The position numbers and the translations under genes were made by a program. From IMG/VR virus record IMGVR_UViG_3300037042_006844, positions 62,001 through 126,000 of that record: a stretch of DNA of 64,000 bases. One strand, written 5' to 3'. Of this stretch, positions 9,470 to 48,473 are shown piece by piece (position 1 is the first letter of the stretch; each line of letters opens with the position of its first letter). The notes below the pieces were generated by a model. It was given only the letters and a program-made list of their open reading frames with translations, ran no database searches and was not told where the DNA came from.

Positions 9470-9587
9470 ATCAATAAATAGGCATGTGGGCACAAAAAAA
9501 GGTCAGCACATTATATGCTGACCTTTGAAATGGTGGACGTGGGGAATTATTTTTGACATTTTCTCATCACCTCCACTATTTATTGGT

Positions 9588-10169
9588 ATGGCAAAAACTC
9601 AAGTAAAATGCGAATCATGTGGAAATCTTTTTCAAAAAGAAAACAAAGAAATCAACCGTTGTAAAAAACGAGGTATCGTTGGGCACTATTGCAGTAATTC
9701 ATGTGTAGCAAAACATAGAAACTCAACAAGGACAAAACAGTATTGGGAAAAGCAATACGCTAAACACCCCACACTAAAAGGATTGGCAAACAATCGAGAA
9801 GACATATATTCTCCGTTCAGACCATTCCTAAACAAAGGACGAGCATCACTCAAAAAGAATGGATGTGATATTGATGTGGAATATCTAAAGAAACTTTGGG
9901 ATGAACAGCGAGGAAAGTGTCCATATACTGGTGTTCAAATGATATTGCCGAAAAACACACTGGATCACACAACAGTAAAATCACTGAAAAAAGCAAGTCT
10001 TGATCGTATAGATTCCTCTCAGAGTTATATCAAAGGAAATATTGAATTTGTTTGTATGGCAGTCAATTTAGCAAAAAACAATTTCACAAAAAAAGCCATG
10101 ACTTCATTTTTACGCGAAGTCATGGAATCTATGAATGCTCTTAGTGTTAATCAAGTGCAACCAACGTGA
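9588..10169 (+). CDS. HNH/His-Cys-type homing endonuclease inserted at the tmRNA 3' end
   Basis: Zn-finger CxxC...YCSxxC N-terminus; GKCPYTG...SLDRIDSSQSYIKGNIEFVC..VNLAK. Confidence 0.8.
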   Translation: MAKTQVKCESCGNLFQKENKEINRCKKRGIVGHYCSNSCVAKHRNSTRTKQYWEKQYAKHPTLKGLANNREDIYSPFRPFLNKGRASLKKNGCDIDVEYLKKLWDEQRGKCPYTGVQMILPKNTLDHTTVKSLKKASLDRIDSSQSYIKGNIEFVCMAVNLAKNNFTKKAMTSFLREVMESMNALSVNQVQPT

Positions 10170-10190
10170 CGGTGGCATTCTTCTGCACTC

Positions 10191-10571
10191 TGGACGTAAC
10201 GGGAGTTGAACCCGTGTCTTTAAGAACTGTTAGCTCCGGACTACATGTGTATGCAGTTTGAATTTGTTAGGAAATGCAATCGAAACTACCAAAAATGCAC
10301 TTCTTAGGATTTGCTGTATTTCGATTGAAACCACAGATCAACTTTTTCAATCATAGTTCGTAAATGACATTTGTTTCGGCTACCGAACGATCACCGAACA
10401 AACGGACAACCTTTATTAGGCTGCAACTGCTGCGACATTCTCGTAAGAGAAGTCATAGCTCACTACATTTTCCTTAGCGGTTAATGTTTAGATAGATTTT
10501 TTAGGAAGCCAACTATCATCTTCCACATGCCCATTGCGAACGCACTCTTAAATCGAAACCAGTATACGCCC
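10191..10571 (-). ncRNA. ssrA: tmRNA, tag peptide AKENVVSYDFSYENVAAVAA*
   Basis: Acceptor GGGCGTA/TACGTCC with G3.U70, T arm GGGTTCAACTCCC, tag ORF 10478-10416 ending AA*; CCA not encoded. Confidence 0.92.
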
Positions 10572-10716: not shown

Positions 10717-11616
10717 TCAAGTGGAAAGTGTATTTTCACACGGCTCATACAGTTTTATGTAGTCTTTTCCATATTTTTTCTCCACATATTGTATAAACGG
10801 ACCGATGTCATTTTTGCCAATCACTTGTAATTTATGAGGAAAATATGCAAATTTTGCCTCAACCTTATCGTCCATATATCCTTTCACTTCCACATAATCA
10901 CCATTCTCCAAAATAAAATCTGGAAAAAATTTTAACTTTTTTCCAGCAAATTCATATTGAAATCCGTCGGTATTTCTTTTGAAATTTACGCCATGTTCCA
11001 ATTGATAAACTACCCATGCCAATTCCCACGAACTATTACAATAATACCCTTTATACCACCCTTGCTTCCCGCGACCTCCCTTGACACGATATCCACCCGA
11101 TTTGCCTTTCATATATCCGGTTTTTACCGCCCACTCACCATAACATTTATGAGAGCAACAGATTCTTTTAGATTTTTTAGTTTTGTAAAATGGCAGTTGA
11201 CATATAGGGCAGTTCAAATAGTTGCCGGTTTTTGGATTGTTTTTATAAAATCCAATTATTGTTTTGGATTTGTCGGATAATATTTTCTTTTCAACATCAG
11301 TCCACCTATGATGCCCACCATTTTTTTGGGTATAAATTGCAGCACATTTTGATGAACAATAATTATTATCATACCTTTTCTCAAATGGGATAGCGGAATT
11401 ACAATGTAAACATTTTTTAGGGGATTTATAATATTCTTCCCGCCGCATCTCGTGTTTTTGTGGAAGATGGTCCGCAATTGTGTGTTTGTTGTGCTCTCTG
11501 CTACAAACATTAGAACAGAAATGATTTTTATATCCTTTCTTACCCATTCTTTTTATTTCGGAAATGGATTTTGGAAATTCTATACTACATTGGGAACAAT
11601 TTACTGGTATTTTCAT
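10717..11616 (-). CDS. homing endonuclease, PD-(D/E)xK type with Zn-finger repeats
   Basis: Three CxxC..CSxxC units; SSWE...FFPDFIL...YVEVKGY. Confidence 0.75.
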   Translation of the reverse strand: MKIPVNCSQCSIEFPKSISEIKRMGKKGYKNHFCSNVCSREHNKHTIADHLPQKHEMRREEYYKSPKKCLHCNSAIPFEKRYDNNYCSSKCAAIYTQKNGGHHRWTDVEKKILSDKSKTIIGFYKNNPKTGNYLNCPICQLPFYKTKKSKRICCSHKCYGEWAVKTGYMKGKSGGYRVKGGRGKQGWYKGYYCNSSWELAWVVYQLEHGVNFKRNTDGFQYEFAGKKLKFFPDFILENGDYVEVKGYMDDKVEAKFAYFPHKLQVIGKNDIGPFIQYVEKKYGKDYIKLYEPCENTLST

Positions 11617-11637: not shown

Positions 11638-11757
11638 TGGAGCGAAAAGAAGGTTTTTGAACTGACTATTTTAGTTAGATTTGGTTCACATGGAGAATTT
11701 TGAAATCTCGCATTATCAGTTTGGAAGACTGACGCTCTACCATTGAGCTATACCCGC
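11638..11757 (-). pseudogene. degenerate tRNA-Gly(TCC)
   Basis: Perfect 5' half GCGGGTATAGCTCAATGGTAGAGC..ctTCCaa; T arm and 3' acceptor scrambled; CGCTCCA end displaced. Confidence 0.6.
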
Positions 11758-12703: not shown

Positions 12704-13114
12704 ATGCCAACATCAAAATTAAAATCGGTCCTTCGCCAATTGCTGCGAGAAATTCACGAAGAGCAATCCAATATCAAACTCGACAAAAAGAACGTGTCGT
12801 TCAAAGAAATTTCGTATATTTCTGCCAAAAAAATGTTTAGGATGGAAGTTGCATTGGTAAACGTGCCACGTCATCTTGATAATCCAGATGAAATGGCACA
12901 AGCATTCAAAGATTTTCTTGAAGCGACATATCCAAAAAACACACAATTTAGCACACCAGTATTTGATGCGTTTTATGACAACAAACGCAAATCATACAAA
13001 GTGACTCGCGAAACAGACTGGCAAGTAAGTCCCGGAGCCATTGCAAATCCACATGGATGGGGTTCCTCAAAAGGTAATGCGGTCACTGCTGTCACTTTTG
13101 TAACATCACCATAA
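12704..13114 (+). CDS. hypothetical protein
   Basis: TATTTATA motif before ATG; LKSVLRQLLRE N-terminus. Confidence 0.6.
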   Translation: MPTSKLKSVLRQLLREIHEEQSNIKLDKKNVSFKEISYISAKKMFRMEVALVNVPRHLDNPDEMAQAFKDFLEATYPKNTQFSTPVFDAFYDNKRKSYKVTRETDWQVSPGAIANPHGWGSSKGNAVTAVTFVTSP

Positions 13115-13120
13115 AAGTTT

Positions 13121-13369
13121 TGACGTAGCTGTAGCCGATGTCCTGTTCTATTCCTACATTTATCTCAGCATTGCTGCTGGTTGTTCGTTAAAAACAACTG
13201 CTCCAACCTTGTCCTAATAACGTGCAGCACTACACTCGGACACTTTAGGATTACTGCTAATTTGTGGTAATAACGAGTTAAAAACTCTTCCAACATCTGC
13301 TGTGCAGCATCGAACTTCCTCTAACACTGAATGGTCAAATCCAATGCCAGCGTAGGATCGCTTGCGTCA
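13121..13369 (-). ncRNA. rnpB: RNase P RNA (compact, ~250 nt)
   Basis: P1 GACGCAAGC/GCTACGTC; GAGGAAGTTCGATG pairs with CATCGGCT (P4 with bulged U); P2 TCCTAC/GTAGGA after AGATAAAT; P3 hairpin. Confidence 0.85.
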
Positions 13370-13456
13370 AAATTAAATAATTCTTTATATAAAGGGCATC
13401 ATTGCCAATTCATATTCATATTTATATACTCAATCGGTCAACCCCGATTTGCAACA

Positions 13457-14089
13457 ATGAACACAATGAAAACCACAATGATGAAACTTGTTTTAACGAT
13501 GATGTTAACATCATTCTGTTTGGTATCAAACGGAGGCACCATTTTTGGAACCTCGCATGACCTCGGCACAAAAGGCTGGGGAACAACAGAAACATGTAAA
13601 TTTTGTCACGCGCCACATCAAAACCAAGCTGTAGCAAACGCTCCCCTTTGGAATCGCACGTTAACAGTTCAAACATATGTTCTATATGGCAGTCCTTCTT
13701 ATAAAGGAAAAGGTAATCAGCCCGGAGTAGAATCGTTGATGTGTTTGAGTTGTCACGATGGAACTGTCGCACTTGATTCTTTTGGAAACGGTGGAATCAT
13801 ACAACAAGGCACTCATATGATCGGTGAAAATCGAATGATTGGTGGTAAAGGCACCCTTGCCCACGATCATCCAATCGCATTTGCATATGATGCAGCACTA
13901 TTGGCAGAAGATAATAAACTAGTTCAGCCAGTGTCGGCAGCATTCGTTGATGCAAGCCATAATATTCCATTGTATGCAACCAAAATGGAATGTGCTTCAT
14001 GCCATGACCCGCACGATAATGGTTTCGGCAATTTTTTGCGTATGGACAATTCAGCAAGTGGATTGTGCATAAAATGCCATTTGAAATAA
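13457..14089 (+). CDS. secreted multiheme cytochrome c (doubled-CXXCH / cytochrome c3-like family)
   Basis: Signal peptide; four CXXCH (CKFCH, CLSCH, CASCH, CIKCH), CHxPH and DHPI motifs. Confidence 0.9.
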   Translation: MNTMKTTMMKLVLTMMLTSFCLVSNGGTIFGTSHDLGTKGWGTTETCKFCHAPHQNQAVANAPLWNRTLTVQTYVLYGSPSYKGKGNQPGVESLMCLSCHDGTVALDSFGNGGIIQQGTHMIGENRMIGGKGTLAHDHPIAFAYDAALLAEDNKLVQPVSAAFVDASHNIPLYATKMECASCHDPHDNGFGNFLRMDNSASGLCIKCHLK

Positions 14090-15171: not shown

Positions 15172-15678
15172 TTAAATTTTCTTTTCTACCGTATAACCGT
15201 TGTGTATAAGAACCTCTTTACACAATTTTATAAAATCTTCTACTAACAAATCGCCTTTTGCCATATTAGCTTCTTTACAAGCCAACCCTAAATTTGTTAT
15301 TTCACATCCACCATTTTTCGACACAGGAATAATATGGTCACAATTATAGGTTTTTGGTTCTAATAAGTCAATCTTTCTTCCTGTTAAGTAACATACAGGA
15401 GTTTCTAACACTTTCTCTTTGAATTCTTTTGAAGAAAAGACTAGATCGGCTCTTTTTCCTTTACAATTTCTATTTCCATTTATAAAACTAAAATTGTCTT
15501 TTTTCCTTTTAAGAATTCCATTTAGAGTTTTTTTATAACTCTTAAATCTAATTTTTGACTTTTCTTTTTGTCCTATACCGCAATGATATGCTATAGTTCC
15601 TTTAGAACAACCTAAAAGTTTTCGTATTTCAGCATACGATCTGCCTTCACTTCTCAATCTTAATATGTTTTCTTTCAT
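15172..15678 (-). CDS. HNH homing endonuclease with N-terminal HTH
   Basis: GRSYAEIRKLLGCSKGTI; CYLTG...DHIIPVSKNG..EITNLGLACKEANMAK. Confidence 0.85.
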   Translation of the reverse strand: MKENILRLRSEGRSYAEIRKLLGCSKGTIAYHCGIGQKEKSKIRFKSYKKTLNGILKRKKDNFSFINGNRNCKGKRADLVFSSKEFKEKVLETPVCYLTGRKIDLLEPKTYNCDHIIPVSKNGGCEITNLGLACKEANMAKGDLLVEDFIKLCKEVLIHNGYTVEKKI

Positions 15679-15844: not shown

Positions 15845-15919
15845 TGGTGGAGCCTAGCGGTTACGCTCCGCTGACCTCGCATTGCAAGTGCGATGTGTTA
15901 CTATTAGCACCAAGACCCC
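15845..15919 (-). tRNA. tRNA-Ala(TGC)
   Basis: G3.U70, atypical T loop AGCGTAA. Confidence 0.8.
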
Positions 15920-22954: not shown

Positions 22955-23029
22955 TGGCTGGCACTGTAGGACTTGCACCTACAATCTCTCGGTTCAGAGC
23001 CGATTGCGATTCTATTACGCTAAGTGCCA
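22955..23029 (-). tRNA. tRNA-Gln(CTG)
   Basis: cloverleaf, CCA. Confidence 0.82.
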
Positions 23030-23139: not shown

Positions 23140-23213
23140 TGGAGCCTCCAGCGGGTAACGCTCCTGCGTTTCAGCTTTACCAAAGCCGTGTAATACTTTT
23201 ATACTATGGAGGC
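23140..23213 (-). tRNA. tRNA-Thr(GGT)
   Basis: cloverleaf, atypical T loop. Confidence 0.8.
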
Positions 23214-28598: not shown

Positions 28599-28674
28599 TG
28601 GTTGCCCCAGTTGGCTTTGCTCCAACCACCTTCGCCTTATCAAGACGCTGCTCTACTAAATGAGCTATGGGGCA
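28599..28674 (-). tRNA. tRNA-Ile(GAT)
   Basis: cloverleaf, atypical T loop. Confidence 0.8.
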
Positions 28675-30768: not shown

Positions 30769-30842
30769 TGGTGGCAATGGCGGGACTTGAACCCACAACT
30801 TGTGCAGTTATCAACGCACTACTCTAATTGAGTTACATCGCC
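30769..30842 (-). tRNA. tRNA-Ile(GAT)
   Basis: cloverleaf, bulged anticodon stem. Confidence 0.72.
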
Positions 30843-31146: not shown

Positions 31147-31238
31147 TGGTGGTGGAGGTGAGATTCGCACTCACATTGTTTACCACAAGGGTATGGGTTT
31201 TACAGACCCACGCTTTCAACTATTCAGACCACTCCACC
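31147..31238 (-). tRNA. tRNA-Tyr(GTA)
   Basis: long arm, CCA. Confidence 0.82.
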
Positions 31239-32624: not shown

Positions 32625-32699
32625 TGGGGTGATATGCGGGTTACGATCCCGCACAAACAGTTCCACAAACTGTTATGCTACCACTACATCAATATCACC
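32625..32699 (-). tRNA. tRNA-His(GTG)
   Basis: G-1:C73, CCA. Confidence 0.82.
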
Positions 32700-33273: not shown

Positions 33274-33347
33274 TGGCTCCCGAAGATGGACTCGCACCAC
33301 CACAAACTGGGTAACAGCCAGCCGTGCTACTTTGACACTACTCGGGA
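33274..33347 (-). tRNA. tRNA-Asn(GTT)
   Basis: cloverleaf, CCA. Confidence 0.82.
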
Positions 33348-33590: not shown

Positions 33591-33667
33591 TGGAGCATCG
33601 TGTGGGTAACGCTCCCACTCAGTATCTTGTTTGGAAGACAAGTGCCTCACTTCTCAGCCAACGATGC
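33591..33667 (-). tRNA. tRNA-Gly(TCC)
   Basis: cloverleaf, U73. Confidence 0.8.
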
Positions 33668-33764: not shown

Positions 33765-33840
33765 TGGTGGTCCAGTAGGGAGTTAAACCCTAAATTCAAC
33801 GTTCGTAATGTTGTGTGATATTCAGTTTCACCACCGGACC
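33765..33840 (-). tRNA. tRNA-Arg(ACG)
   Basis: cloverleaf, CCA. Confidence 0.78.
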
Positions 33841-47775: not shown

Positions 47776-48402
47776 ATATATGTTCAGACCAGTTTGAAAA
47801 AAATGCCCGAATGGATCGTGGAGACAGATTACATGTTTCCGACTTCCGCGATGAGTCCCAACAGTTCATAGGGAATTAAACAGGACTCGCTAAACAGCTA
47901 AAACAACCATTATTTCCCATTGATTAGCCCATTCGGTAAATCAATTTAGCTGGCAGTAATCCATCTGGTGTATGTATTACATTTATGACGTATGGTGAAT
48001 TTCGGATTCCAGCCGAACTCAGTCCTCTAGCGTCTATTACCAGCCAAAGCCAAAAATTAAATTTGAGGATTTCACGCTTTATTCGTTCCGAATGAAGGGC
48101 TTTGACCCATATACCCCACTGGAGGGCGGGTGCTTTAGATTTAAGCTACATCGTCTATCTCAAAAAAATTGGTGGATGCTATCGTGACCCTTACGCCGGA
48201 TTTTTACCGGAGCAACATAATCTAACCCGTGGCAAAACGGAGATAACCTATGCTGCTACTCAAAGAAGGATCTGTGGTTTGCAATCACTTAGCCTTCTAA
48301 AAAATCAATATAGAGCTTTTCAACCCGCCCACTGAAGGGCTATGCTTAATCTTACATCACGCAAGGAATCACCCCTGGTGAAAGAGGCTCTATAAAATTG
48401 AA

Positions 48403-48473
48403 TGATGTCGGTGGGACTCGAACCCACATCAAGCCCTTGAACGGGCTTCTCTACCATTGAGCTACACACATCA
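48403..48473 (-). ncRNA. tRNA-like RNA, 6-nt anticodon loop, no CCA
   Basis: canonical D and T arms, arm AAGCCC-GTTCAA-GGGCTT. Confidence 0.5.

What the first reader, a model, noticed from the sequence alone, without database searches (positions are those of the whole stretch)
13121..13369. Phage-encoded compact RNase P RNA
The catalytic core is recognisable with covarying P4 (GATG/CATC replacing GGG/CCC), P1, P2, P3 and AGATAAAT. It is only ~250 nt, implying a reduced specificity domain. The S domain normally reads the D/T elbow, and many tRNAs here have non-canonical T loops or lack D arms. This may be a co-adapted processing ribozyme (inference).
Basis: partly seen in the sequence, partly recalled or inferred. 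Interest (0 to 1): 0.75.

Follow-up and report, generated by a model that had tools for sequence, protein, structure and literature searches.

The report
Huge-phage gene for compact RNase P RNA
A 303-kb freshwater phage carries its own 251-nt copy of RNase P RNA, the ribozyme that trims tRNA precursors, with the full catalytic core but almost no substrate-recognition domain; it belongs to an apparently undescribed family found in many huge phages.

Summary
Window 13120-13370 (minus strand, the strand of all 32 tRNAs and the tmRNA) lies in an ORF-free gap and encodes a 251-nt RNA with the complete bacterial type-A RNase P catalytic domain: P1-P6, P15-P18, J5/15, the CCA-binding GGU, CR-I, CR-IV and CR-V.

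Rfam finds nothing in the window. However, the element belongs to a family of at least 30 copies in IMG/VR contigs. Family member L027 hits RF00010 at E=1e-13. A model built only from distant members scores the window at 162 bits (E~1e-52), and it also finds genuine bacterial RNase P RNAs at their Rfam coordinates. Helices covary strongly: 96% paired against 75% in shuffles, with 19 of 26 pairs showing double changes. The P2 and P6 pseudoknots covary too.

The specificity domain is cut to about 40 nt. P4 carries family-specific compensatory swaps. The phage has no rnpA gene. Family members sit inside tRNA arrays, and two relatives are circularly permuted.

Catalysis is inferred, not shown. I found no prior report of a phage-encoded RNase P RNA.

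The parts
13120..13370 (-). Whole RNase P RNA gene, P1 to P1, 251 nt. The covariance-model match spans 13117-13372.
   Evidence: R1 scores it at 162.2 bits, E~1e-52, and it is the only copy in the 303-kb genome. It lies in an ORF-free gap.
13380..13408 (-). Sigma-70-like promoter match: TTGGCA, 17-nt spacer, AAGAAT. It would place the transcription start at about 13373, the 5' end of P1.
   Evidence: Consensus scan, 9 of 12 matches. This is a consensus match only, not shown to be functional.
13360..13370 (-). P1 5' strand: UUGACG plus AGC.
   Evidence: Pairs with 13120-13129. 78-92% of cells are paired against 53-61% in shuffles, and every pair shows double changes.
13352..13357 (-). P2 5' strand: UCCUAC.
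   Evidence: Pairs with GUAGGA at 13152-13157. 97% paired against 68% shuffled, and 6 of 6 pairs show double changes. This helix is not part of model R1.
13321..13350 (-). P3 hairpin.
   Evidence: Its base helix is 98-99% paired, and 4 of 5 pairs show double changes.
13308..13321 (-). CR-I and the P4 5' strand: GAGGAAGUUCGAUG, with a bulged U.
   Evidence: GAGGAAGUUC is invariant in the family. It aligns without gaps to the Rfam consensus GAGGAAAGUCC in relative L027.
13304..13307 (-). P5 5' strand: CUGC.
   Evidence: Pairs with GCAG at 13254-13257. 100% paired against 66% shuffled, and 4 of 4 pairs show double changes.
13298..13302 (-). P6 pseudoknot 5' strand: CAGCA.
   Evidence: Pairs with UGCUG in the P17 loop at 13225-13229. 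90% paired against 69% shuffled and 19-32% when slid, and 4 of 5 pairs show double changes.
13258..13297 (-). Remnant specificity domain of about 40 nt. It has a short P7 (13290-13292 with 13265-13267), an internal loop (AAG on one side, CGUUAUUA on the other) and one hairpin, GAGU-UUUUA-ACUC (13275-13287).
   Evidence: Anchor-based comparison shows the stem covarying in relatives: CGUGG/CCACG, UUUGG/CCAAA, GGUAG/CUACC. In L027's Rfam alignment, about 140 S-domain model positions collapse to 38 nt.
13251..13257 (-). P5 3' strand (GCAG) followed by J5/15 (UAA).
   Evidence: The two As of J5/15 are invariant in the family and align to the Rfam consensus GCAA.
13202..13250 (-). P15, the L15 internal loop, P16 and P17. 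P15 is UCC/GGA, P16 is UGUCC/GGACA and P17 is GUG/CAC. The L15 3' side holds GGU at 13206-13208, the expected tRNA 3'-CCA binding site.
   Evidence: P15 is 100% paired with 3 of 3 double changes, and P17 is 90% paired. GGU is invariant. The region aligns to the Rfam P15-P17 consensus (..AAAUAGG..CGGGUAGG..) in L027.
13180..13198 (-). Extra hairpin between P15 and P18: GUUGUU-UUUAACG-AACAAC.
   Evidence: Relatives keep it with compensatory changes: GCAAUC/GAUUGC, GUCAUC/GAUGAC, GUUCCC/GGGAAC. It was read by eye and not scored formally.
13166..13179 (-). P18-like hairpin with a GNRA tetraloop: CAGCA-GCAA-UGCUG.
   Evidence: Relatives carry CAAUA-GAAA-UAUUG and CAGUA-GCAA-UACUG, among others. It is absent in the smallest members, L042 and L043.
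13158..13165 (-). CR-IV / J18-2: AGAUAAAU.
   Evidence: Invariant in the family. It aligns to the Rfam consensus AGAUgAAU.
13152..13157 (-). P2 3' strand: GUAGGA.
   Evidence: See the P2 5' strand entry.
13132..13146 (-). CR-V and the P4 3' strand: ACAGGACAUCGGCUA.
   Evidence: Same length as the Rfam consensus ACAGAACCCGGCUUA and aligns to it. P4's distal pairs are 99% paired against 74% shuffled.
13120..13129 (-). P1 3' strand: GCU plus CGUCAA.
   Evidence: See the P1 5' strand entry.

Best explanation
Window 13120-13370(-) is a phage gene for the RNA subunit of RNase P, derived from the bacterial type-A lineage.

Shown here: homology to bacterial RNase P RNA, and selection on the RNase P fold.

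Inferred: the transcript folds into a complete catalytic domain. Coaxial P1/P4/P5 and P2/P3 stacks are tied together by the P4 and P6 pseudoknots, with the conserved J18/2 (AGAUAAAU), J2/4 plus CR-V (ACAGGAC) and J5/15 (UAA) strands around the bulged-U site of P4.

Inferred: it binds the acceptor stem of the phage's pre-tRNAs, pairs its L15 GGU with their genome-encoded 3'-CCA, and cuts off the short 5' leaders of the tightly packed tRNA arrays (spacers of 5-16 nt).

Inferred: because the phage has no rnpA gene, the RNA most likely works with the host's RnpA protein.

Inferred: the specificity domain, which normally reads the T-loop/D-loop elbow, is reduced to a short stem and one hairpin. Substrate choice would therefore rest mainly on the acceptor stem, the CCA and the leader.

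Inferred: the benefit to the phage is extra, or host-independent, capacity to mature its dozens of tRNAs during infection.
For: 1. An independent family model gives 162.2 bits, E~1e-52, for the window.

2. Family member L027 hits RF00010 at 53.2 bits, E=1e-13 to 1e-15, with P1, P2, P3, CR-I, P5, J5/15, P15-P17, CR-IV and CR-V aligned in order. The permuted members hit RF00011 at E=1.7e-13 and 2.1e-9.

3. Reciprocal test: R1's top hit in four genuine bacterial RNase P loci falls at the RF00010 coordinates. E-values are 9e-11 (Saccharibacteria), 1e-8 (Flavobacterium) and about 0.01 for the other two.

4. Covariation: 96.2% of cells paired against 74.7% in shuffles (0 of 500 shuffles reach it), 19 of 26 pairs with double changes, and slid controls at 26-49%. 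P2 (97%) and P6 (90%), which are not in the model, covary too. RNAalifold recovers P1, P3, P4, P5 and P15 blind.

5. The invariant columns are GAGGAAGUUC, the J5/15 AA, the L15 GGU, AGAUAAAU, ACAG.AC and GGCUA.

6. 29 of 33 tRNA genes in the window encode CCA, which fits the retained GGU.

7. 24 of 25 family loci carry 2-29 tRNAs on the element's strand, against 0 of 10 chance loci. In seven loci a tRNA starts within about 10 nt of the element's 3' end.

8. Relatives' sequences occur in contigs from RNA libraries of independent freshwater metatranscriptomes.

9. The genome has no canonical RNase P RNA and no rnpA, and it does have a terminase.
Against: - No cleavage assay exists, so catalysis is inferred from conservation.
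- Curated Rfam models do not detect the window copy at all, and relatives fall below the gathering scores (45-59 bits against 97-100).
- Two of the three proximal P4 pairs, next to the bulged U where catalytic metal ions are thought to bind (my knowledge), differ from the bacterial consensus. They read A-U, G-C, U.G where the Rfam consensus gives A-U, A-U, G-C.
- The window copy has ACAGGAC where most members have ACAGAAC.
- Most of the S domain is missing, which in engineered bacterial ribozymes lowers activity and raises dependence on the protein (my knowledge).
- The phage supplies no protein subunit.
- In the window the gene is not inside a tRNA array. It sits between two opposite-strand ORFs and has only a weak promoter match.
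- The RNA-library contigs come from relatives and could include DNA carry-over.
Confidence: 0.8

Rival explanations
1. It is an RNase-P-derived RNA that no longer cleaves tRNA and has another role. Examples: a decoy that sequesters the host RnpA protein or pre-tRNAs and so disables host RNase P, or a scaffold or regulator for the phage's tRNA transcripts.
For: The specificity domain is nearly gone. The proximal P4 pairs differ from the bacterial consensus. No phage protein partner exists. Rfam scores are far below threshold.
Against: The strictly invariant positions are exactly the unpaired catalytic-core strands: AGAUAAAU, ACAG.AC, the J5/15 AA, the bulged U and the L15 GGU. A protein decoy would mainly need the protein-binding surface. 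The P4 changes are compensatory, so helix geometry is kept: 5 bp, a bulged U, then 3 bp. Most phage tRNA genes encode the CCA that GGU would read.
Confidence: 0.12
2. It is a decaying, non-functional fragment of a host rnpB gene picked up by the phage.
For: Phages do capture host genes. The element is shorter than cellular RNase P RNAs, and the window copy sits outside the tRNA array.
Against: At least 30 copies occur in diverse viral contigs of 4-735 kb, and compensatory changes keep every helix paired. That indicates purifying selection on the structure. No cellular copy of this type turned up in 302 sampled Bacteroidota and Patescibacteria genomes, where the best scores were 20-47 bits against 75-211 for viral copies.
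Confidence: 0.03
3. It is an unrelated large structured phage RNA, of the GOLLD or ROOL kind that also accompanies tRNAs, and it only resembles RNase P by chance.
For: GOLLD RNA occurs in the same tRNA array in relative L011. Rfam gives no RNase P hit on the window.
Against: Model-to-model links to RF00010 and RF00011 at E of 1e-9 to 1e-15, plus reciprocal hits on real RNase P genes. The order of helices and conserved strands is identical to type A. No GOLLD or ROOL hit falls on the element.
Confidence: 0.02
4. One reading: the ribozyme is co-adapted to phage tRNAs with unusual elbows. On this view the S domain was lost because the phage's tRNAs no longer present a canonical T-loop/D-loop elbow.
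For: 9 of 33 tRNAs in the window have non-canonical T loops, for example GGAGCGUAACC or GGUGCAAGUCC, some with D loops lacking GG. The S domain is minimal.
Against: 24 of 33 tRNAs have canonical TTCRA T loops, and 32 of 33 align full-length to the tRNA model, so D arms are present. No correlation between S-domain size and tRNA elbow type across phages was tested. Family members with large insertions in the S-domain hairpin coexist with similar tRNA sets.
Confidence: 0.25

Closest known systems
Bacterial RNase P RNA, class A (Rfam RF00010; the E. coli M1 RNA type)
   Same: The order and pairing of P1, P2, P3, P4, P5, P6, P15, P16, P17 and P18 are the same. So are the J5/15 As, the L15 GGU, CR-I, CR-IV and CR-V. 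P4 has the same geometry: 5 bp, a bulged U, then 3 bp. The P6 pseudoknot between L17 and the strand after P5 is the class-A hallmark.
   Different: The RNA is 251 nt against the 367-position class A model. P8, P9, P13 and P14 are missing and P10-12 is reduced to one hairpin. The proximal P4 pairs are A-U, G-C, U.G instead of A-U, A-U, G-C. There is an extra hairpin between P15 and P18. It is encoded by a phage with no rnpA. It scores below Rfam detection.
Diverged or reduced RNase P RNAs of CPR bacteria (Lui et al. 2021, PMC8172020)
   Same: Both are type-A-derived with helices missing, and both are found only below Rfam thresholds. A Saccharibacteria RNase P RNA of 285 nt scores only 74 bits on RF00010 and is the best cellular match to the phage model in the reciprocal test.
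   Different: The CPR RNAs are the cell's own housekeeping gene and often lack P16, P17, P18 and the GGU motif. The phage family keeps those and loses the S domain instead. Sampled CPR genomes score 20-47 bits on R1 against 75-211 for phage copies.
Archaeal type T RNase P RNA of Pyrobaculum / Thermoproteaceae, and engineered catalytic-domain-only bacterial ribozymes (from my own knowledge; the Thermoproteaceae loss of P12 is cited in PMC8172020)
   Same: These are natural or engineered RNase P RNAs of about 200 nt that keep the catalytic domain and lack nearly all of the specificity domain. They show that such a design can be active.
   Different: Type T is archaeal, works with archaeal proteins and lacks the bacterial P15 GGU loop. 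The phage RNA is clearly bacterial type A. No Rfam type-T hit was seen.
Other phage-borne translation RNAs in tRNA arrays: tRNAs, tmRNA, GOLLD
   Same: Same genomic niche and strand. tmRNA lies 2.5-3 kb away in the window and in relatives, and GOLLD occurs in L011.
   Different: The fold and the inferred function differ. This would be an enzyme acting on the neighbouring gene products.

Membership tests
Bacterial RNase P RNA (class A) | CR-I strand (consensus GAGGAAAGUCC) forming the 5' strand of P4 with a bulged U | tested here: met
   GAGGAAGUUC is invariant in the family. It aligns without gaps to the Rfam consensus. Two positions differ from the consensus, and both are compensated in the 3' strand.
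Bacterial RNase P RNA (class A) | CR-IV (AGAUGAAU, J18/2) followed by the P2 3' strand, then CR-V (ACAGAAnnnGGCUUA) forming the P4 3' strand | tested here: met
   The window reads AGAUAAAU-GUAGGA-AUAGA-ACAGGACAUCGGCUA. These strings are invariant or near-invariant in the family and align to the consensus.
Bacterial RNase P RNA (class A) | Long-range P4 helix crossing P2 (a pseudoknot), supported by covariation | tested here: met
   P4's distal pairs are 99% paired against 74% shuffled, with at least nine pairing states. P2 is 97% paired against 68%, with 6 of 6 pairs showing double changes.
Bacterial RNase P RNA (class A) | P15-L15-P16-P17 arm with the CCA-binding GGU, and the P6 pseudoknot between L17 and the strand 3' of P5 | tested here: met
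   P15 is 100% paired, P17 90% and P6 90% (against 69% shuffled and 19-32% slid). GGU is invariant. P16 was poorly registered in the automatic alignment: 75% paired.
Bacterial RNase P RNA (class A) | Full specificity domain (P7-P14 with CR-II and CR-III) | tested here: not met
   Only about 40 nt is present: a short P7, an internal loop and one hairpin. In L027's alignment, about 140 Rfam model positions are replaced by 38 nt. A CR-II-like string, AGAGGGUGAAAAGGGUG, occurs only in the permuted relative L031.
Bacterial RNase P RNA (class A) | Score at or above the Rfam gathering threshold (100 bits for RF00010) | tested here: not met
   The window gives no hit. The best relative scores 53.2 bits, E=1e-13. 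Homology is established through the family model instead.
Bacterial RNase P RNA (class A) | Endonucleolytic 5' maturation of pre-tRNA, alone at high salt or with RnpA | not testable with these tools
The function is inferred from the conserved core.
Bacterial RNase P holoenzyme | Cognate RnpA protein subunit (PF00825) encoded in the same genome | tested here: not met
   G000 gives no match at E<=1, while the control search finds it in 10 of the 14 control genomes. Use of the host's protein is an inference. CheckV rates the genome 89% complete.
Bacterial RNase P RNA class B (RF00011) | Significant match to the class B model or architecture | tested here: inconclusive
   The window has no relevant hit. 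The permuted relatives L031 and L034 score best on RF00011, at 58.8 and 45.6 bits. The window-type members have the class-A P6/P16/P17 arrangement.
GOLLD / ROOL-type ornate phage RNAs | Match to RF02032 or related models | tested here: not met
   No such hit falls on the element in the window or in relatives. GOLLD is detected elsewhere in L011 at 203 bits, so the search does work.

The most novel reading that the evidence does not exclude
Huge phages carry an orthogonal, minimal RNase P ribozyme that takes over tRNA 5' maturation during infection. In this reading the ribozyme borrows, and possibly monopolises, the host RnpA protein. It releases itself from polycistronic tRNA transcripts through its own reaction. 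Having shed the elbow-reading S domain, it also accepts the phage's tRNAs with non-canonical T loops. The fold is plastic enough in phages to exist in naturally circularly permuted form.
Probability: 0.3. Interest if true: 0.88.

Novelty: new variant of a known kind. Interest (0 to 1): 0.8.

Why it matters
RNase P RNA is treated as a near-universal cellular housekeeping ribozyme. Surveys of huge phages list tRNAs, tmRNA, synthetases and ribosomal proteins, but not RNase P; the survey paper never mentions it.

A virus-borne RNase P RNA would add a catalytic RNA to the phage translation toolkit. It would also explain how arrays of dozens of tightly packed tRNAs are matured once the host is shut down.

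The family offers natural minimal ribozymes of about 195-250 nt. They have a complete catalytic domain, a nearly absent specificity domain, a variant P4 metal-site helix and natural circular permutations. That is useful material for asking what the S domain and the conserved P4 bases are actually needed for.

The case also shows that curated models miss the family entirely. It is present but unannotated in the published 735-kb phage genome, so genome annotation pipelines need a new model.

Tried and rejected
- **Direct Rfam searches.** Gathering threshold on the window, then E<=10 on 12900-13600, gave no RNase P hit. Whole-genome RF00010 and RF00011 searches gave nothing relevant. Those E-values are multiplied over 4,227 families, so these are weak negatives.
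- **Single-sequence folding.** z-scores of -1.45 and -1.93 are uninformative for a pseudoknotted RNA.
- **blastn of the window region and of the element against GenBank phages.** No match.
- **Mis-specified patterns (my errors).** One search had an extra N and returned only a chance coding hit, L012. Searches used NNNNGGCTA, one base too long. As a result the single genome-contig scan says nothing about cellular copies (its four loci were chance hits), and one search's zero result is void. The corrected permuted-form scan is.
- **Chance hits from the correct pattern.** L013, L015, L021, L024, L026, L028, L032, L033, L037, L038 and L045-L047 have no match to model R1. None of the nine I scanned for tRNAs (L013, L015, L021, L024, L032, L033, L038, L045, L047) has one. 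I discarded them all.
- **First automatic P1/P2 boundary finder.** It mis-set several members and was replaced.
- **P7 and P16 in alignment A2.** They were out of register, at 43% and 75% paired. I assessed P7 by anchors instead.
- **rnpA in the phage.** Absent.
- **RNA-library evidence.** Only contigs of relatives were available, without strand or end information. This is suggestive only.
- **Literature.** Seven searches found no report of a phage RNase P RNA. The library lacks most subscription journals, so prior description cannot be excluded.

Full report
**What is at the coordinates.** The window is part of a 303,564-bp IMG/VR virus record. The same contig carries a large-terminase domain. 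In the window, all 32 tRNA genes and a tmRNA lie on the minus strand. The reported interval sits in a gap with no credible ORF. The gap runs from the stop of a + strand ORF at 13114 to the likely start of a multihaem cytochrome c gene at 13457. I checked the coordinates base by base.

**Direct tests fail, family-level tests succeed.** Rfam's RNase P models give no hit on the window at gathering score, none at E<=10 on the 700-nt region, and nothing relevant across the whole genome. MFE z-scores are weak. A DNA pattern taken from the putative CR-IV/P2/CR-V segment found ten other viral contigs. A looser pattern that left the P4 bases free found 45 loci. About 30 of these are real copies: each has AGGAAGUUCnnnn 115-325 nt upstream, and the nnnn is complementary to the four bases after ACAGAAC.

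I built a covariance model, R1, from 12 compact members that exclude the window and its close kin. R1 scores window 13117-13372(-) at 162.2 bits, E~1e-52, and this is the only copy in the genome. Thirty full-length members in the fetched loci score 75-211 bits.

**Link to RNase P.** Member L027 has the same architecture as the window copy and hits RF00010 at 53.2 bits (E=1e-13, or 1e-15 on the short region). The alignment runs through P1, P2, P3, GAGGAA..UC, P5, J5/15, P15-P17, CGGGUAG, AGAUAAAUG and AACAGAACCC.GGCUA in the canonical order. About 140 S-domain model positions are replaced by 38 nt. Two further members hit RF00011 at E=1.7e-13 and 2.1e-9.

The reciprocal test also works. R1's best hit in four genuine bacterial RNase P loci falls at the RF00010 coordinates: a Saccharibacteria MAG at E=9e-11, a Flavobacterium at E=1e-8, and two Bacteroidota MAGs at E~0.01.

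**Covariation.** RNAalifold, working blind, recovers P1, P3, the long-range P4, P5 and P15. Of its 26 pairs, 18 show compensatory changes. On the 33-row model alignment, 96.2% of cells pair against 74.7% in shuffles (0 of 500 shuffles reach the observed value). 19 of 26 pairs have double-sided changes, and register-shifted controls give 26-49%.

I then counted helices that the model does not contain, using a structure defined on the window sequence:

| Helix | % paired | Shuffled % | Note |
|---|---|---|---|
| P2 | 97 | 68 | 6 of 6 pairs with double changes |
| P6 pseudoknot | 90 | 69 | 19-32% when slid |
| P17 | 90 | 63 | |
| P15 | 100 | 81 | |
| P5 | 100 | 66 | |

P7 and P16 were out of register in that alignment. 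Anchor-based reading shows P7 covarying: CGUGG/CCACG, UUUGG/CCAAA, GGUAG/CUACC, AGUGG/CCACU.

The invariant columns of the family are GAGGAAGUUC, two As after P5 (J5/15), GGU in the 3' side of the P15 internal loop, AGAUAAAU, ACAG.AC and GGCUA. Those are the unpaired core strands of RNase P.

**Anatomy of the window copy.** P1 to P1 is 251 nt. In order:
- P1, P2 5', P3.
- CR-I and P4 5', P5 5', P6 5'.
- A 40-nt remnant S domain: a 3-bp P7, an internal loop (AAG / CGUUAUUA) and the hairpin GAGU-UUUUA-ACUC.
- P5 3', J5/15 (UAA).
- P15, L15, P16, P17, with the L17 loop pairing back as P6.
- GGU, P15 3'.
- An extra hairpin, then a P18-like hairpin with a GCAA loop.
- AGAUAAAU, P2 3', AUAGA, ACAGGAC, P4 3', P1 3'.

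Differences from cellular type A:
1. P8, P9, P13 and P14 are absent, and P10-12 is reduced to one hairpin. In relatives that hairpin is the site of insertions of up to about 130 nt.
2. The three P4 pairs proximal to the bulged U are invariably A-U, G-C and U.G (24 of 24 sequences). The Rfam consensus gives A-U, A-U and G-C. Helix length and the bulge are unchanged.
3. There is an extra hairpin before P18.
4. The smallest members, L042 and L043, lack both 3' hairpins and are about 170-180 nt from P1 to P1.

**Context.** The phage has no rnpA. 29 of 33 tRNA genes encode CCA, usually followed by AUUU, and spacers within arrays are 5-16 nt. That matches a ribozyme that keeps its CCA-binding GGU.

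24 of 25 family loci hold 2-29 tRNAs on the element's strand, against none in 10 chance-hit loci. In L016, L017, L035, L023, L025, L041 and L043 a tRNA begins within about 10 nt of the element's 3' end, and in L002 a tRNA ends 4 nt before its 5' end. In those phages the RNA would be cut out of the array transcript by tRNA processing itself. That is an inference.

In the window the gene stands apart from the arrays. A weak sigma-70-like match is positioned to start transcription at P1.

Seventeen freshwater metatranscriptomes hold conserved words of the element. Short contigs of relatives from four RNA libraries cover it, and one spans it end to end. This is consistent with expression but does not prove it.

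**Distribution.** Members occur in viral contigs from 4 kb to 488 kb. One occurs in LR756501.1, the 735-kb uncultured phage record, at 147 bits, and that record has no annotation.

In 151 Bacteroidota and 151 Patescibacteria genomes, R1's best hits are 20-47 bits. Most are 310-350 nt long, the size expected for those organisms' own RNase P RNAs, although I checked that identity only for G001. No phage-type copy was found among the genomes searched. My one scan of the full genome collection was mis-specified and cannot be used (see Tried and rejected).

Nine of 33 tRNAs have non-canonical T loops. However, 24 are canonical and 32 of 33 align full-length to the tRNA model, so the claim that D arms are missing is not borne out. 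The idea stays plausible but untested.

**Prior knowledge.** Seven literature searches found no description of a phage-encoded RNase P RNA, and the huge-phage survey does not mention RNase P. The nearest prior art is the report of diverged, helix-poor RNase P RNAs in CPR bacteria, found only below Rfam thresholds (PMC8172020). From my own knowledge, natural S-domain-less RNase P RNAs (archaeal type T) and engineered catalytic-domain ribozymes are active. That makes the inferred function feasible.

**Verdict.** This is a real feature and it was correctly identified. Homology to bacterial type-A RNase P RNA and selection on its fold are shown. Catalysis, use of the host protein and the benefit to the phage are inferred. 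It is a new variant of a known kind and of high interest.

Noticed in passing
L031:767-1060(-) and L034:2500-2760(+): Two viral contigs carry circularly permuted RNase P RNAs flanked by tRNAs on both sides. The order is: closing stem, AGAUAAAU, P2 3', ACAGAAC, P4 3', a 5-nt loop in place of P1, P2 5', P3, AGGAAGUUC, P4 5', an S-like region, closing stem. P2, P4 and the closing stem all pair. They hit RF00011 at E=1.7e-13 and 2.1e-9. L031 has a CR-II-like string, AGAGGGUGAAAAGGGUG. A corrected pattern scan found only these two.
   Followed up: partly
L027:1903-2038(-): The 488-kb phage contig has a second, partial R1 hit (58.8 bits, model positions 60-220), about 330 nt downstream of its full copy and just before a tRNA. 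It contains AGAGAAAU...ACAGGAUCCCGCUUAC followed by GGGAAGUUC, so it may be a second rearranged or degenerate copy.
   Followed up: no
L011:8285-8748(-): A full GOLLD RNA (RF02032, 203 bits) with a tRNA nested inside it lies in the same tRNA array and on the same strand as that contig's RNase P RNA.
   Followed up: no
window 10188-10571(-): Phage tmRNA (116 bits) with tag peptide AKENVVSYDFSYENVAAVAA. Close relatives have tmRNAs with near-identical tags about 1 kb from their RNase P RNA.
   Followed up: no
window 13457-14089(+): The ORF next to the element encodes a signal-peptide-bearing multihaem cytochrome c (doubled CXXCH, cytochrome c7/c3 and MtrC-like domains). That is an unusual auxiliary gene for a phage.
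   Followed up: partly
window 15848-15919, 22958-23029, 23143-23213, 28602-28674, 31150-31238, 32628-32698, 33277-33347, 33594-33667, 33768-33840 (all -): Nine tRNA genes have non-canonical T loops, for example GGAGCGUAACC, GGAGCGUUACC, GGUGCAAGUCC and GGAUCGUAACC, in place of GGUUCRANYCC. Several also have D loops without GG.
   Followed up: partly
window 30769-30842(-), 48402-48473(-), 11693-11750(-): Three odd tRNA-like genes. ARAGORN calls a four-base anticodon (gata) for the first and a two-base anticodon for the second. The third is a 58-nt truncated tRNA-like match covering model positions 8-63.
   Followed up: no
L002:10182-10256, L007:336-410, L023:3197-3272, L034:3475-3550, L043:9933-10005: Relatives carry tRNAs with a CUA anticodon (amber suppressors, which ARAGORN labels Pyl). 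This hints that some of these phages read TAG as a sense codon.
   Followed up: no
window 15172-15678(-), 10717-11616(-), 9525-10169(+): ORFs interspersed with the RNA genes. 15172-15678 has HNH and HTH domains. 10717-11616 has a weak phage endonuclease I match. 10717-11616 and 9525-10169 share Cys-rich N-termini, which suggests homing endonucleases.
   Followed up: partly
LR756501.1:181309-181541(-) (L065:2967-3199): The published 735-kb uncultured huge-phage genome contains an RNase P RNA of this family (147 bits). The record has no annotation, and no tRNA lies within 3 kb.
   Followed up: yes
G001:C5:18728-19012 (L059): The only RF00010 match in a 0.5-Mb Saccharibacteria MAG, presumably its own RNase P RNA, is 285 nt long and scores 74 bits, below the gathering score of 100. 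This agrees with the published report of diverged CPR RNase P RNAs.
   Followed up: partly
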